Positions 49,460 through 63,714 of a stretch of DNA of 64,000 nucleotides are shown here, one piece after another. Where the stretch lies: positions 82,088,001 through 82,152,000 of the forward strand of contig OZ287751.1 in the NCBI GenBank assembly GCA_965649765.1. Reading direction: 5' to 3'. Source of the stretch: Bispira polyomma. Lineage: Eukaryota. How positions within the stretch are numbered: the first letter of the stretch is position 1; each line of letters starts with the position of its first letter. The notes under the pieces are model-generated. The model was not told the DNA's origin. It was given only the letters and a program-made list of their open reading frames with translations, and did not search any database. The position numbers and the translations under genes are program-made.

Positions 49460-50614
49460 GTGAGTGTGCATCTAATGTTAAAACAAGAAATAAGTTACTA
49501 ATAGTGGGTATTATTATTAGTATTCACCATTTACATGTGATACCCTATTGATATATTATCCTCTAAGGCATTGAATCTCTGAAGGGAATAGTCCTAAAAC
49601 ATAGCCTGGGTCGTCATCAGTGGGCAATGGCATATTCATAATTGGTTCAAGGATGTTGTCCTCAAATGAAGCTAATGGCATTAGCAAGAGTCGATATGGA
49701 GGACCTTCTGATTACCAGATCAACTCCCTAACCACAAGATAATGGGAGATGTTAAAATAAGTTTTAGGTTATATTTAGGCTGGTACACATTAGGCCTGAC
49801 AATTGAACATTGCATTGTATTTGACTAGAAATAAATTTTGAATGATTTCTTTTCCACAGGTTTTCAATATACTGCCACATTTAGTATGTCGTTTTGTTTT
49901 CAATAACACAACATTCATGTTAAAATATTAATGCTTCTCTGAGATATTCGCCCTTAACTTATAGGTGGGCCTCAACTGTCGGTTTGCCTTTAATGCTACA
50001 ATGATTTTGAAAATGTAATGTGATGTTCACATGTCGATGATTTCTTATACAGTGGTGGTAATATTTGAGTTCCTTCTTCCTGTTTTAACATGTGATTGAT
50101 TGTTAACTAATTATGTTGAACCGTTTGACATATTTATGATTTTCTATAAAATAGAAATGAATATTTAGATTCATTCTTACTATTTTAAAATGGCTTTTAT
50201 TGTTGGTCCATTCTTTATTATTATCTCGTACTTATATTGTGTTTATATAGTTGCAATTATATACATTATTAATGACCTGTAATAATGCCCTACCTGATAT
50301 AATAATATCACATTATAGGATTATGTAATGGCTACTTCATTACCTTGTAATGTACCATTTTAAGTTTATCTTTAAATTTTACTAGTAACTGTTAACAAAT
50401 GATAAAAAATAGATACAGTGAATTCTAATGTAAAGTTGTATACAAAATATGTTTGATGTATTAGTTATATGTCTTCTGCTTTATATATCATCATATCTTT
50501 TAAAAGGAGTAAAACAAATCAATTTTAGAACAGTGTTGTTCCAATGTGTCGATATGAAACAGGCACCTATCCTTACCTGGTTAAGAGTGACCTACTATGA
50601 CATATTTTTTCCAG

Positions 50615-52707
50615 GGACAATAGCCTTACTAGTGAATGGAGTACCCCTACTCAACCCTTTTAGTAATGCAGGCAAAGTTACCACTACCAAGTGTACCAGC
50701 CCTGCACAGATGACCATACAGGACTTTAAAGAACTGATACAGTGCATACTGGATACCGCAGTAACAAATGTCTTTATCGGTGTGGCCTTAGATGGACATC
50801 CCATTTATAAACAGGACTCTACCATGTTAGAGAAGGACTTTGACATATGCCATGGAGTTCATTCTAATGGTAGATATGTATATTTTCTTAGCTATAACTT
50901 TCCATATATAATGCCTTGTCTCAGACAGGGTAGCTATGGTTACATGGATGATTCTGCTATAAAAAAGAAGCTTACTAAAGACTGTAGAGTAGTGTGTCCA
51001 GATGACGTAGCTGTGACGTCAGGGTCATGTGACACCCCTGTATTTCTTAAGAAAGAAACAAATATTGAAAGTGTCAAGGGTTTAAACCAGGTAAGAAATA
51101 GGGAACTAGAAGAAAGTTTAATACAAGATCATAGACATGTAAAACTTCAGAACAGCACAAAAAACCAGGAATTAGTGAACTTGACCATTTCAAGAACTGG
51201 TGATAAAGAAACTGTAACTTCGGCAAGATTAATTGATAATTTTGTAAAGAAACATGAGGACAGCCTACCAATAACAAACCCATCCATAGACCATATAACT
51301 AAAGATGTTCCGAATATGCAACATTCAGAAGAATCCCATGGAATTCTTTATTCGGGTACACATCACAACATCACCATAAGTCAAGAACGTTTGTCTGGAG
51401 CCAATCAAATCTTGCAAGACATTTTGATTACCTCCACAGCATCACTGCCTGCACAAGTACCTGATGTAGAAGATAATTCACACGAAATAGAAGATTCTTT
51501 TGTCACAACAGCTGTATCTTTGAATGGATCATCTGATTTTGTTGGACGAGAGACAGATGAAGAGGCCCTATCAGATACCAACTCTGTAGTGAATAGATCA
51601 CAATCCATGGTCACGGGTGATTTCCAGGACACTTACTTAACTAGAGGCATTGAAACAACAGACGCTGTACTTAATAGACAAGGAACAGGTGGTGGTGATC
51701 TAAAAAGTACTGAAGGTAACACAACAAGAGAACACCATGAGGAGATTGGAACAACAATGAGTCTTGAACCAGTACATTATGACTTCAATTTCAGTACTAC
51801 AACATCTGGTGATGAGACATTTAACACTGCAAATTACATTTCTTCTATTTATGACATCTTGTTTGGTAGAACTGGTTATGTTAGTAATAATAGCATGACT
51901 ACAGAGAGTCATGGTGGAATCTTAGAAAATTCCTCAAATGTAAATACAGATGTAAACAATGCAAGTACAGTTTCAACGATGCATCTATTGTATAATAAAA
52001 CTAATTCCACCAGTAATAATTACACAAACACCTTAAATGAGAGTGCAAATTCAGATTCTACACTGCAAAGCAACTTTACCTTCTTTAATGTGAATAGTGT
52101 AGCAGTAGAGTCTCAAACAGCAATGCCAGTGACCATATCAACAGATATTGATAACATTGTGCCTTTCGGGACGAAAAGTCAGAAAAACAAAATGGAGTCT
52201 AATGAGCCTAGCACTGTTACACTTACCACTGAGAATAATTCCAATATTTTATCCACAGCATTATTCCACACCAGAAGGAAACATAAAATTGGGGCTAAAT
52301 ATAGAAATATCACTGGGACCACTGAGATAATGACATCTAGTCAGCAAGCAACAATGCGTGGGGTTTCTGGAGATGACCTGGGACATGGAACTGCTCAGAC
52401 TGTGTTTGGAGGTAGACATCCAGATACTACAGACGTTATTGAACTCCCACCGAGACACATGGCATTAGTTGGAGATAATGGTTCTACTATTGTAAACAGT
52501 AACAGTAGCTTAAACTTGAATGGAACTCTTCCAACGGATTTGAAGAGTACAACAAAGCCACCAAAAGGCGATAAAACCAGCTTGTCCCAGCTAGAAGAGA
52601 GCTTGGGTATGTCCAGTAAAATGATGGGTTATATTGGGGGAGTGACAGTGTGTGTGGTGGGGGTTATTGTGGGTTTTATAGCCTCATTGTTTAAAGAGGA
52701 AAAGTGA
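50615..52707 (+). CDS. YHYH-like/mucin-like type I membrane protein B, exon 2
   Basis: TTTTCCAG|GG acceptor, phase 1. NGVPLLNP, GVALDGHPIY, DFDICHG and YNFPYIMPC motifs, an S/T/N-rich stalk, TM segment YIGGVTVCVVGVIVGFIASLF and tail KEEK. Confidence 0.87.
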
Positions 52708-57091: not shown

Positions 57092-58545
57092 TTTATATTT
57101 GCCTTAAGCAGTCTACTGCTACATTTTCTTCATGCATGATGGGGTCAGGGATCGAACCAGACAACAGGTAGTCGGAGGCAAGTATTCTTGTACACCACTC
57201 AATCCTGAACTGAAAAAAACCACCAGCATTCTACTAGTCTACTACCAACTGCAGAGGTGAAACTGTTTCTGTCTATGGAGTAAGAAGTAAGCTTGTAAAA
57301 TTACCATATGAGAAAGGCTGTATCAATTTAGAAAGTTTCAAGTTAATGAGATAGCTAAACAGTTACAAATAAAAGACCCATATAGTGATTTGGTATACAT
57401 ACTCAAACAGTTGCACATATGCATTAGAAAGACAACATCAGCTTCTTTAACATTAGCTGAGTTAATAGATAACAACGCTGTCAATTTGAAGTAGTCGCAT
57501 GCTATGGTAACAGTAACAGTATGCCTGGTATATGTATGGTAATGTAAGTTGGAAAGCGTTAAGACAAATTATACCTTACATAACCTACCAATACAATGAA
57601 TGCCCACCCAATTACCAATTTATAGTATTACACAACTTATGACTTTGATGTACATAAAATCTCAGAAAAAGCAGTATTTCTAAGCATATTTTATGAGCAT
57701 GCTATCACATCATCAATTATTTTCTGCCAACATGACCAGGAAAACCACGAAAATTAAAATAAATTAATTAATAATGAGGTGGTTCTATTGTTCATGGTCC
57801 ACCAAAGTCGATTGGTTTTAGTCAAGTTTCCAGGGAGACCATGTTTCAAATCTTGTTTGAGTTTACATAACATGCACCTCAGTTTGTACCTCCTCCTTCT
57901 TTTGAAATTTGGGACACACTAGAGTGAGTAGCATAAAACCAACTTTAAAATTTATCTTATATAGAACAGTTAGATTCAGATATTATTACCAAGATTGTTG
58001 AATTTATTAATTATTACCACTAGAAATACACAAAAGTCTGTATTGCATTTTCTTTAAAACAATTGTGGTAATCTAACAATTTCAGGTAATGTAACAATAC
58101 TTTCTCGAACATGCACACTTTATTGATACGTGTAGTATTTTGATAAATTTATTGTTCTTCATATTATCAATGCATAAAGTTGATATGGAAACTATTCAGA
58201 TTCCTTCGCTGAAAAAATATACTCAACACTGAGAAGCCAACATTATCTGAATATGGCATATTTATACACCACAGATTTTATACAGACTTTAAATTTTTAA
58301 AAATTACATTTCTTAATTAAATAATACTTGCATAATATATTTTTTAAATATTATTATTATGAATATATTTTATATGACGGCTATAATTTTCAGTCAAATG
58401 TTCACTTGTTGAATTGATAATTCGTTTAACAAAATTAAAAATTGATCATTTATCGTTGTAGATTGAGTTCCAAGACCAAATAAGTAGCCCAAAGCTGGTT
58501 TCATTTCACTTTTTTGCTATTATTTCTTTCTTTCAGGATGGAATT

Positions 58546-58913
58546 TTACCTGCCACCCAAAAATTCTGAGAATCTTTTACCATTGTAGTAATCTCTAATA
58601 TTTCTTTTTCCACCCAGAAATTCAGAGAATCGTTTGGCCTGGGAATCCCTGAATCTGACTGGAACGGAGGATCGCTTTCCTCCAAGGAATTCGGAAAACC
58701 TCTTCTTTTTGCCGCCTAGGAATTCAGAGAACCTTTTTTTACCCCCAAGAAATTCGGAAAACCTTTTCTTTTTGCCTCCAAGAAATTCTGAAAATCTCTT
58801 GTTTTCTTCTAGAAATTCTGAGAACTTCTTGCGCCTGCCACCAAGGAATTCAGAAAATCGTTTTTTGGTTGGCTGGTCAGCTTGTAGATAGGTAAAGAAA
58901 GAGGAAGAAAAAT
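58546..58913 (-). CDS. EFLGa: EFLGamide (TRH-type) neuropeptide precursor, alternative terminal exon
   Basis: Acceptor TTGTTTTTCAG|AT, phase 1. Open frame DFSSSFFTYLQADQPTKKR-FSEFLGG-RRKK-FSEFLEEN-KR-FSEFLGG... to FSEFLGGR*. Seven FSEFLGG copies lie between basic sites and differ at synonymous positions. Confidence 0.93.
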
Positions 58914-59817
58914 CTGAAAAACAATGGAATAATTATGTTCCAAATGGAAAAACAGTTCTAATGAATTTGGCAAAGTCACATTAGCCTGTTGTATGTTGAG
59001 CTAATCTAATATTAAATTGTGCATTTTAATGTAATTACTGTTCCACAAAATACATACATGGTGTTCAATGAAATATATATAAATATATAATTCATAAAAT
59101 TACACATACATTTGAATATATATATCTCTAACACATCCATGAGGTCAGTTAACATTTAGCAATTGGCATACAACAGTTCAGCTTTAAATTTGCTTAAAAA
59201 TTTAAAGGATATTAAGTGGATTTACATATTGTTTACTGAATCCTCTTAGCTATAGGTATACTATATCAATATGTTATTTTACTGTTATCAATGCAATTCT
59301 ATCACATATACATATTTAATATGAAAAATAGTACAATATATTGCAAAAAGACTAAATGACTAATTGGTGGAAAGAAGCATCTGAAAGGAAAGGAACTATC
59401 AACAAAAACATAGTATTAAAAGCATGCGATCAGTTCACAAAGAGGTACGTCTACAATATATATCACATCAGGGTTAGGAAGTCAGCAAAACGTCTCTACA
59501 AAACTGTCAAAGAAACAAAAACACCATGAAGAAACATGAACAATAAATTGTGTTGAAATCCTACTGTACTAAGTAGAAATATGTAATACTAAAGAAGAGA
59601 GATCATTGAAAGATATAGTACAGTTTGAGCAGCAATAAAACTAAAATGTGCAGAGCGCAGAAAGGTGCAAAAACGCAAGCATTCAGACAGTAACATTCAG
59701 AAGTGCATGTTTCAGAAAAGAGTCTTTCAGTGCAGTGTCAAAGTGGACATGCCAGTAGTATATGTACAACTTATGTATACCATTTACCTATATCACCCGT
59801 TGCAATGTAGGAATATT

Positions 59818-60968
59818 TCATCTTGTTTTGGCACTACTATTATCTGTAAGGTCATCTGATCTTTTTCCAACAAACATTCGCCTTTTCCCAGACATTTGCT
59901 GCGAGTATATATCTGAAATATCAATGCCATCATTGCTCTTTTTTCCAACAAACATACGACGCTTCCCAACAAACATACGTCTCTTTGCATCTTCATTTTG
60001 ATCATCTCGTTTTCCCACGAACATTCGCCTCTTGTCAAGGTCAGCCTCCAGTTCATGACTACGTTTGCCGACAAACATGCGTCTTTTGATGTTATCCTCG
60101 TATGATTTATCATTACGTTTGCCAACAAACATGCGTCGTTTCTCATAATCATCCTCAAATTCATCACTACGTTTTCCAACAAACATGCGTCTCTTTTCAT
60201 TGTCTTCATCATATTCGTCATCACGTTTACCGACAAACATGCGCCGCTTAGACTCATCTTGTCTTTTACCTACAAACATCCTTCTTTTTGTCATTTCCTC
60301 ATCAGCTTCGTCATTACGTTTGCCAACAAACATCCGTCTTTTGGAAAACTCATCATCTGATGTTCTTTTCCCAACAAATCGACGACGCTTTTCTTGGTCA
60401 TTTACATCATCAGCATCATAGTCTCGCTTTCCAACAAACATGCGTCTCTTTGTATCATCACTCCTTCTACCCACGAACATTCTCCGTTTTCCTTCATTGT
60501 CTTCTACAGAATCGTCTTGGGCTCTTTTACCTACAAACATTCTTCGCTTGTTATTTTGTGCTAACTCCTGCAGAACATCTTGTAATCGCTTGCCAACAAA
60601 CATTCGTCGTTTCTCCTCATTTGTTGCATCATTAATTGAATCATCGACATAGTCCTCTCTTTTACCTACAAACATTCTGCGCTTGCCTGCATCATATGAT
60701 CTGTCAGTTGAACGTTTACCTACAAAATGAGACATTGTGTGCACAGGGCTAAAGGGAGCACTGAAGAGGTAAGGGTGTGTATATTGGTGCATTAGGTTGA
60801 ATCGGCTTTGCTTCCCAATCAAAAGCCTATTTCTTTTTCCTACAAATTTAGGAAAGCGCCTGTATTTGGTTGTACCACGCTGCCTATTAATAGCAAATCG
60901 CTTTTCAGTGCCTGATATTATGTTGTCATCTACCCAGTGAACAGGAAGCATGATCCAGCCACCAGAGT
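59818..60968 (-). CDS. FVa: FVamide neuropeptide precursor, alternative terminal exon (15 x RMFVamide)
   Basis: Acceptor TTTTTGGCGTTTACAG|AC, phase 1. 15 KR-RMFVG-K/R units with acidic spacers, plus RRFVG, FPKFVG and SHFVG variants. Has its own stop codon. Confidence 0.95.
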
Positions 60969-62013
60969 CTGTAAACGCCAAAAAGCGCATCTTAAAAATG
61001 CAGTCAGCGGTACAAACATGGCAAATATGATACATTATACTGGAAGGTTAGGGCAGGTTAAGGTCAATTTTCATTTAATATATTATTAATTAAAATTTTT
61101 ATAATTTAATCTTTTTTATCAATGGTTTCTCAATAACATTAATCTAAGTTAATAGAAAAAAACAATAATCATATATTGTTTATGCAGAAATTGTAATTAT
61201 AAATTATGTATGCATGAATGATTTATATTACCTTTGTATTTTTGACTTGTAGCCAATACATTATTTTATATGCATTGTTAAATATTTTTCATACAAGTTA
61301 AAACAAGTATACTCATAAATAAATTAAGAGACTCATCATAAATCAATTATAATATTTATTAAGAGATCCATTAGCATTAAAATACTTTTAAAGCCTTATT
61401 CAAAACATTGGCTTTAAGAAAGGTGATACTACATTGTTTGTTTATGATCTCGAATTAAATCAGATTATGCTGGCATTCATTACGTACCATGAAATTAAAA
61501 ACGAGTTTTCAGATTTTTGATAAACACAAGATTGATTGTAAAATTTCAAATCTAGCTGTAATACCACCTTTCTTTTCCCTTCGTTCAAAACATGAATAAT
61601 AATGATATGAAGAACAAATTAGTTTAATTAATATCATTAAAATGAATTTTGTACCAGTCACACAGTGAAATATACCTTGGGACGTTTAAATGTATATTTC
61701 TAGCCACAGAAAAACATTTAATGTTCAGCTAAAATAATACATTTTGGAGCTTACAGATGTTTACATAATACTTGGTCAATATAGGTTAATTTTTTTTGTA
61801 ATTTCCAATTTCCTAACTACCAGAGCAAATAGTATTACTTTCAAAATTAGTCTAGGTCTGAATTAGAAGGTAAGCAAGAACATTATATTCATACAGTGGA
61901 ATCTGATTATATAATATCTGTTTCATACTTAGAGTTAAAAATTATACGTGAACAAACTGTTTGCAAGTACTGGTGCTGTACACACCATCACATTTATTTA
62001 CAAGTATACTGAC

Positions 62014-62239
62014 CATCTATATCTTCATCGTCCACATTATTAGCCAGTGCCACCTGGCGGATGTACTCGTTAAGGTCATCAGGTGCAGCGACTACAGCTG
62101 CCACGCTGTCCGACACATCTCCATTGTCGACCACTCCAATAGCCAGGTTGCGATAGGATGCCTCCCCAACTTCCTGACAGCGCCCCGTCTGTAGCAGTGA
62201 AACCGTCAGCAGCCAACCAGCTAAATGAAAGCTCCACAT
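62014..62239 (-). CDS. shared signal-peptide exon of the FVamide/EFLGamide precursor gene
   Basis: MWSFHLAGWLLTVSLLQTGRC signal peptide followed by an acidic pro-region. Donor G|GTCAGT in phase 1 fits both downstream exons. Confidence 0.88.
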
Positions 62240-62299
62240 GGTAAGATACTTCTGGGCGTTCACTTTGGGGAGTGATATTTAATGCTGGATAGGATGTTT

Positions 62300-62345
62300 C
62301 TCTTTCTCCTCTCTCTCCTCTCACTCTCTCTCGCTCTCTCTTTGT
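62300..62345. repeat. (TC)n microsatellite upstream of the neuropeptide ATG
   Basis: Imperfect TC run, GA-rich on the sense strand. Confidence 0.7.
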
Positions 62346-63714
62346 TGTGTGTTATCTGTGTGTGTAAAAACAGAGATAAGATGGTTAGAGTTTTCATTAT
62401 GGAGGCACTGTTTGTCTTTTTGTTAATAATAACATCTACAGTCGCTTTTGGTGTATAGAGATTATTAAGAAATTTTTCCACCCGTCATTTGGGGGTTTCT
62501 GGTTCCGGTACACACTGTGATATATAAACAGGTCTACTAATTGTTATTTTTTAAAATAGTTAAACTATTCATTCACCTCACAGAGATGTTAATTTTTTAA
62601 TTTTGTTTGTGTTTAGTGGGGGAGGTATTCTTATTCTTATATATGAGTTTTTTTTAATGTTTTTATGTGTTTCTTTAATTAAAAGGAACTTACACCATTC
62701 GATGTTGTAAATGATTTTTCCTCAATGATGAATCAATTTTGTGAAATTATTGAGCTTAATTACTTATTGATAAGACAACACTGGGAGACACTGAGAGATT
62801 TGGCAATGTGTCATTCCAATATTTTGGTACAATGTAGCAGATGTTCTACATAGACGCTAAAGAGTTGCTCATAATGTCCACATATACTAAACTTTAAAAA
62901 TTACTAATATATGATCACACCACCTGTACACTGCTGAAAGATGAACAAGAAGAATGGGATAGGCTAAATATGCTTAAGTATGTGTAAAACCAAACTTTGT
63001 GTGGGTAAACATAAATTGAAAATGAGGCAACAAACTGTGTCTAATTTAACTGAAGATAAATTCAGACAAAAGATGATTTTAAAAGGAGTGTACTGTCAAC
63101 AATAAGAAAAGGCAATGGCTTGTGACAATTAAATATCTTAAATAACAAATGCATCATGTAAAATACTAGGTGAGTGTTCCTGCCAAATACAATTTTTAAT
63201 TGATAATGTATTTTATAAAACAAACACAAGACAAATTTCTCTCAGAAAGTCTAAATCCTTCAAATACCATTTTATGTAGAATACAAGCTTTACAAGTTTC
63301 AATAGTAAACATTAGTTCTCTGGCTATCCTAAGAAGTTGTCTTACATAATTTTAAAGTTTTGAGACTACTGTCTTAGTCTTCGTCAAGTTTATGTTTTCT
63401 CTTTTGTTTTTATTGTTGTTTAGAAAACATTAAATATACTAATTAATTTACTAATTAATTTTCAGGACCTGTTGGTGTATGGATTGGGCATGGGCCTAAG
63501 AAGAATATATTAAGTTTTATTGCACATCTGGATCAAAGGGCTGATCAAGTGAGCTGTTTTCGATTTTTGGCACAGCAACACATTAGATGCGCTATGCACT
63601 TCAGTGAGTAACCCTTTCTAGTCATAAAAGCAAACCTACACATCTTACTATCAAAATCTCAGATACTATGTTTGTTAAATTTACAAAATAATTAGTCTAT
63701 TAAGTTTGAATTTA

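What the first reader, a model, noticed from the sequence alone, without database searches (positions are those of the whole stretch)
58546..62239. One neuropeptide gene, two outputs: a hidden TRH-type FSEFLGamide exon competes with an RMFVamide exon
Seen: the ORF track shows only an antisense shadow (PPRNSENL, 58634-58891 +). The minus strand carries an ATG-less exon with 7 FSEFLG-G copies. It and the 15x RMFVamide exon both start in phase 1 after good acceptors, matching the phase-1 donor of the signal-peptide exon, and each has its own stop. Candidate sense-strand polyA signals are ATTAAA near 59320 and 59030, and AATAAA near 58150 and 58120. Knowledge: EFLGamide is the protostome ligand of TRH-type receptors, and I recall FVamide/EFLGamide being splice-linked in Platynereis. 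Inference: a calcitonin/CGRP-like alternative terminal-exon switch lets neurons choose between two unrelated transmitters.
Basis: partly seen in the sequence, partly recalled or inferred. Interest (0 to 1): 0.85.

Follow-up and report, generated by a model that had tools for sequence, protein, structure and literature searches.

The report
Worm FVamide/EFLGamide gene, probably spliced
This is the known two-in-one neuropeptide gene of worms and molluscs, which makes both FVamide and the TRH-like peptide EFLGamide; here and in related worms the layout rules out the published "stop-codon read-through" explanation and points to alternative splicing, as already reported for oyster, although no RNA from this species was available.

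Summary
Observation confirmed: a signal-peptide exon (phase-1 donor 62014), an FVamide exon (acceptor 60968, 15x RMFVG, stop 59818) and an ATG-less exon (acceptor 58913, 7x FSEFLGG, stop 58546), each single-copy in a genome that is probably a sabelline fan worm. It is the known FVa/EFLGa (MIP-PRQFVa/fulicin) gene. Platynereis was explained by read-through (PMC3890597); oyster by alternative splicing (PMC8398477). Read-through cannot work here: 20 more stops lie in the 904-nt spacer. Eight related loci keep FV-then-EFLG, with spacers of 0.6-10.8 kb, 7-59 stops and mostly shifted frames. A transcript-like contig from a relative joins a signal peptide directly to EFLG at exactly the homologous phase-1 acceptor (79% identity after the joint, 17-29% before). 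So splicing is well supported, but not shown in this species. The calcitonin/CGRP-type polyA switch is not supported: the hexamers are at chance level, and published FV mRNAs carry the EFLG region in their 3' UTR, which favours competing 3' acceptors. Known gene, new member; its value is as evidence against the annelid read-through claim.

The parts
62014..62239 (-). Shared first coding exon: signal peptide plus acidic spacer, 75 codons + 1 nt, phase-1 donor (G|GTCAGT)
   Evidence: single copy; homologous phase-1 signal exons upstream of FV in L005 and L019
60969..62013 (-). Intron 1 (GT-AG, 1045 nt); its other strong AGs give a stop within 20 codons
59818..60968 (-). FVamide coding exon: 15 (R)MFVG, plus FPKFVG, ...SHFVG and RFVG copies, dibasic sites, TGA; predicted 458-aa precursor with exon 1
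   Evidence: homologues named FV-amide / PRQFVamide / MIP-related
58914..59817 (-). 904-nt spacer, 30% GC, 20-22 stops in every frame, no signal-peptide exon; 3' UTR of the FV form and end of the intron of the EFLG form
   Evidence: profile of signal+EFLG N-termini finds nothing in spacers
58546..58913 (-). ATG-less EFLGamide exon: phase-1 acceptor TTTTTCAG, 7 FSEFLGG (predicted FSEFLGamide) and one decayed FSEFLEE, TAA; predicted 197-aa precursor with exon 1
   Evidence: homologues
58119..58153 (-). Two AATAAA hexamers, candidate distal (possibly shared) polyA signals; at chance level
59025..59320 (-). Two ATTAAA hexamers (59320, 59030), weak candidates for a proximal polyA signal; not significant

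Best explanation
An annelid FVa/EFLGa (fulicin/TRH-type) neuropeptide gene. One signal-peptide exon ends in a phase-1 donor. Spliced to the proximal acceptor (60968) it gives a 458-aa precursor with about 18 FVamide peptides, and the EFLG block sits untranslated downstream. Spliced to the distal acceptor (58913), with the FV block and spacer removed as a 3.1-kb intron, it gives a 197-aa precursor with 7 FSEFLGamide, the annelid TRH-receptor ligand. Most likely these are competing 3' splice sites on a transcript with a shared 3' end, the distal one used in a minority of neurons. Shown: anatomy, reading frames, impossibility of read-through, conservation, and a spliced junction in a relative. 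Inferred: that both joins occur in this species, the shared 3' end, cell-type regulation, peptide processing and receptor.
For: Both exons are phase 1 and open to their stop after the join. EFLG frame has no Met or signal peptide and no private signal exon. 20 stops in frame between FV stop and EFLG. Eight other loci keep FV-then-EFLG on one strand; spacers 579-10,785 nt, 7-59 stops in the eight contiguous pairs (window included), frame shifted in 5 of these 8. Transcript-like contigs L008, L011/L012, L017/L018 encode signal peptide + EFLG in one frame with no FV. L011 matches genomic L007/L020/L021 at 79% over the 48 nt after the predicted acceptor and 17-29% over the 42 nt before, joint G|AA = phase 1. 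Signal exons with phase-1 donors lie upstream of FV in L005 and L019; a profile built only from signal+EFLG N-termini ranks the L019 exon first of 5,088 segments (E 0.008; 0.04 without the signal peptide). Oyster LOC105328755 makes MIP and fulicin precursors by alternative splicing, with MS-detected peptides, and a contig had fulicin out of frame in the 3' UTR.
Against: No RNA run exists for this species in the index. No single species was found with both isoforms sharing exon 1. The library type and species of L008/L011/L017 are unknown, so they are only transcript-like, and their genes are not shown to hold an FV exon. Conzelmann 2013 saw no spliced reads in Platynereis. Phase-1 ranking of acceptors (8 of 9 loci) is weak evidence: background 0.56, P about 0.04, ad hoc score, related loci. 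A 10.8-kb spacer in L019/L006 fits a shared 3' end poorly.
Confidence: 0.8

Rival explanations
1. Calcitonin/CGRP-type alternative terminal exons: same two splice joins, but the choice is made by polyadenylation in the spacer (FV mRNA ends before the EFLG exon). This differs from the best explanation only in the 3' end and control point; the confidence is for this sub-mechanism.
For: Two ATTAAA in the spacer; every relative's spacer has at least one AATAAA or ATTAAA; a 10.8-kb spacer in one relative would suit a proximal polyA site.
Against: No AATAAA in the spacer and counts near chance; Platynereis and oyster FV mRNAs include the EFLG region; EFLGa neurons also stain for FVa in Platynereis.
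Confidence: 0.25
2. Stop-codon read-through from the FV frame into the EFLG frame, as proposed for Platynereis.
For: FV and EFLG frames happen to be the same here; FV stop is TGA; published proposal.
Against: 20 further stops in 904 nt; frame shifted in 5 of 8 loci and 7-59 stops; stop codon type varies (TGA, TAG, TAA) and context here is TGA-A.
Confidence: 0.02
3. EFLG is a separate gene with its own promoter and signal exon in the spacer, or takes its signal exon from another gene (as insect EFLa does from prohormone-4).
For: AT-rich spacer holds short Met-started hydrophobic frames; precedent for a borrowed first exon in Hemiptera and Locusta.
Against: No spacer frame combines a signal-like N-terminus with a usable phase-1 donor; signal+EFLG N-termini resemble the exon upstream of FV in L019, nothing in spacers; linkage kept in nine loci.
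Confidence: 0.07
4. Chimeric FV+EFLG precursors are made from internal phase-1 donors (GTA G|GTAAA at 60720, 60666, 60531, 60270) to 58913.
For: The sites exist and are in frame; 4 of 18 repeats use GTA GGT AA; oyster has a short and a long MIP form.
Against: They follow from V-G-K codons; relatives have 0-1 such sites; no FV+EFLG protein among 99 homologues.
Confidence: 0.08
5. The EFLG block is an untranslated relic.
For: No ATG; one decayed copy (FSEFLEE).
Against: Seven copies identical in protein with varied synonymous codons, single copy in the genome, conserved across species; peptides detected in oyster and immunostained in Platynereis.
Confidence: 0.03

Closest known systems
Platynereis dumerilii / Capitella teleta FVa/EFLGa proneuropeptide (PMC3890597; Veenstra 2011 as cited there)
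   Same: FVamide coding region, stop, then an ATG-less, signal-less EFLG-G block with the extra Gly, in one gene
   Different: Published mechanism is read-through; here 20 stops intervene and a phase-1 acceptor is present. I did not have the Platynereis sequence to test its acceptor.
Crassostrea gigas LOC105328755 MIP (PxFVamide)/fulicin gene (PMC8398477)
   Same: One gene, FV-type and (F/Y)SEFL-type precursors by alternative 3' junction or exon skipping; the paper says the Capitella gene does likewise
   Different: Oyster peptides end FLamide (no extra Gly); three transcripts described; peptides confirmed by MS there, none here
Insect EFLa / prohormone-4 splice fusion (PMC7294237)
   Same: TRH-type exon borrows a signal exon by splicing
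   Different: Partner is prohormone-4, an independent innovation in Hemiptera and Locusta
Vertebrate calcitonin/CGRP gene (own knowledge)
   Same: Shared N-terminal exon(s), alternative peptide exons
   Different: Controlled by a proximal polyA site and yields related peptides; neither is shown here

Membership tests
Lophotrochozoan FVa/EFLGa (MIP-PRQFVa/fulicin) gene | Precursor with repeated xFV-G-dibasic peptides behind a signal peptide | tested here: met
   18 FVG-K/R copies; hits to FV-amide, PRQFVamide, MIP-related proteins
Lophotrochozoan FVa/EFLGa (MIP-PRQFVa/fulicin) gene | EFLG block after the FV stop, lacking Met and signal peptide | tested here: met
Lophotrochozoan FVa/EFLGa (MIP-PRQFVa/fulicin) gene | Single-copy gene in an annelid or mollusc | tested here: met
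   mitogenome strand and skew pattern matches Sabellinae type III
TRH-type (EFLGamide/fulicin) neuropeptides | E-F-L core with amidation Gly between dibasic sites | tested here: met
   7 FSEFLGG; same motif as oyster (F/Y)S(E/D)FL
TRH-type (EFLGamide/fulicin) neuropeptides | Activates a TRH-receptor orthologue | not testable with these tools
   Literature for Platynereis only (second-hand); the primary papers were not held; receptor gene not searched in this genome
Alternatively spliced two-product neuropeptide gene | Both junctions present in RNA of the same species | tested here: inconclusive
   No RNA runs; junction seen only in a relative's transcript-like contig
Calcitonin/CGRP-type polyA switch | Used proximal polyA site between the two peptide exons | tested here: inconclusive
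   No AATAAA, 2 ATTAAA near chance; no 3'-end data
Stop-codon read-through gene | Open frame from the first stop to the extension | tested here: not met
   20 stops in frame; not conserved in relatives

The most novel reading that the evidence does not exclude
Across annelids EFLGamide is made by a conserved phase-1 distal splice acceptor, used in a small subset of FVamide neurons, and the often-cited Platynereis 'neuron-specific read-through' is a missed minor splice form; with oyster this dates a regulated FV/TRH splice switch to the annelid-mollusc ancestor.
Probability: 0.6. Interest if true: 0.45.

Novelty: new member of a known kind. Interest (0 to 1): 0.33.

Why it matters
The gene and its two-peptide layout are known, and splicing is published for oyster. 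What this locus and its relatives add is a clear, cheap test of a standing discrepancy: how annelids make their TRH-type peptide. The read-through model, still cited as an example of functional read-through (PMC5100048), cannot apply to these loci, and a single RT-PCR across exon 1 and the EFLG exon would settle it. Annotation pipelines miss this exon, which hides the TRH ligand in worm genomes.

Tried and rejected
RNA evidence: only three unlabelled contig runs, identical to the genome with no joints. Same-species isoform pair: the search for related loci with the L011 first exon in metagenomes, a profile of N-termini against cluster representatives and the Spirobranchus FV-amide N-terminus against short proteins all found no partner; these blanks are limited by length windows and coverage. 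tblastn of transcript first exons against relatives' upstream DNA gave nothing significant; only the profile did. A second genomic hit of the FV exon (L003) is a tandem repeat. PolyA hexamers and internal G|GTAAA donors were checked and found unremarkable. Van Sinay 2017 and Bauknecht 2015 were not held; Veenstra 2011 was not read.

Full report
Observation. The minus strand carries three coding blocks. Exon 1 runs from ATG 62239 to 62014 (226 nt, phase 1, donor G|GTCAGT) and encodes a hydrophobic N-terminus and an acidic spacer. The FV exon starts after an acceptor at 60968 and holds 15 RMFVG and three variant FVG copies before TGA (59818). The third block starts after TTTTTCAG at 58913, has no Met, holds seven FSEFLGG plus one decayed FSEFLEE and ends at TAA (58546). 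Joined in a script to check frames only, exon 1 gives 458-aa and 197-aa precursors. The other strong AGs in intron 1 and the spacer give stops within 20 codons; weaker in-frame AGs exist inside both exons. Each exon is single-copy in the 1.035-Gb genome. The + strand PPRNSENL frame is a shadow.

Organism. The mitochondrial contig has cox1-3 and nad3 (and probably atp8) on one strand and eight genes with positive GC skew on the other, the pattern described as type III in Sabellinae (PMC13602327). The RRMFVG motif is shared with the Spirobranchus FV-amide protein. The animal is therefore probably a sabelline fan worm; this is inference, not a species match.

What is known. Conzelmann et al. 2013 (PMC3890597) describe the Platynereis FVa mRNA with a second, Met-less EFLGa region after the stop, note the same in Capitella, found no spliced reads, saw EFLGa in a subset of FVa neurons, and proposed read-through; this is still cited as such (PMC5100048). 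Realis-Doyelle et al. 2021 (PMC8398477) show that the oyster gene LOC105328755 gives two MIP (PxFVamide) precursors and one fulicin precursor by alternative splicing, with peptides detected by mass spectrometry, and say the Capitella gene does the same. EFLGa is reported as ligand of the Platynereis TRH-receptor orthologue (second-hand). So the gene, the layout and the splicing idea are all in print.

Mechanism in this locus. The FV and EFLG frames coincide, but the 904-nt spacer has 20 stops in that frame and 20-22 in the others, so read-through is excluded. The spacer has no convincing Met-signal-donor exon.

Comparative evidence. Exon-wise searches and contig look-ups gave eight more genomic loci with FV followed by EFLG on the same strand: spacers 579 to 10,785 nt; in the eight contiguous pairs including the window, 7-59 stops in the FV frame and a shifted frame in five. 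The best-scoring acceptor ahead of the EFLG repeats is phase 1 in eight of nine loci, second-best in the ninth; this alone is weak (background 0.56, P about 0.04, ad hoc score, related loci). Stronger: short transcript-like contigs from three sources (L008, L011/L012, L017/L018) encode signal peptide and EFLG repeats in one frame with no FV. L011 is 79% identical to L007, L020 and L021 over the 48 nt after their predicted acceptors and 17-29% over the 42 nt before, and its joint is G|AA, phase 1. Signal exons with phase-1 donors lie upstream of FV in L005 and L019, and a profile built only from signal+EFLG N-termini ranks the L019 exon first among 5,088 segments (E 0.008). Together these say that the exon upstream of FV is the kind of exon that is joined to EFLG, skipping FV.

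Limits. No RNA of this species was available. No species was found with both isoforms. The source libraries and species of the transcript-like contigs are unknown. The receptor was not tested. Whether the mature peptide is RMFVamide or MFVamide depends on cleavage at KRR/RR sites and is open.

How the choice is made. None stands out here, and the published Platynereis and oyster FV transcripts include the EFLG region as 3' UTR. Competing 3' acceptors with a shared end fit better; a polyA switch remains possible, especially where the spacer is 10 kb. Platynereis staining suggests addition of EFLGa in a subset of FV cells rather than an either/or choice.

Verdict. Real, correctly described, and a new member of a known gene family with a mechanism already published for a mollusc. 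The modest added value is comparative evidence that annelids use splicing, not read-through. Interest 0.33.

Noticed in passing
L015/L016 (G000:C75, 15,503 nt): Mitochondrial genome with genes on both strands and eight positive-GC-skew genes opposite cox1, matching the rare Sabellinae type III pattern of PMC13602327.
   Followed up: partly
window 62299-62341 and about 62355, 62693 (- strand): (GA)n tract upstream of the ATG, a possible acceptor near 62355 and a good donor (GT|GTAAGT) near 62693: there may be a non-coding first exon further upstream.
   Followed up: no
window 60839, 60719, 60929 (- strand): In-frame phase-1 AGs inside the FV exon could give shorter FV precursors, like the short MIP form of oyster; not conserved in position in relatives, untested.
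   Followed up: partly
window 50434-52704 (+ strand): 757-codon Ser/Thr-rich open frame ending in a hydrophobic segment; belongs to the neighbouring YHYH/mucin-stalk gene noted separately by the scan.
   Followed up: no
L003 (G000:C9:36090262-36093714): Tandem repeat of about 54-57 nt that mimics a neuropeptide precursor in translation (VYLVG-RR units); not a paralogue.
   Followed up: yes
P0015-P0022 (JGI/ENA proteins): Further signal-less EFLG frames called as genes from genomic contigs; several have residues typical of a read-through splice acceptor just before the repeats, i.e. probably mis-annotated terminal exons of the same gene.
   Followed up: no
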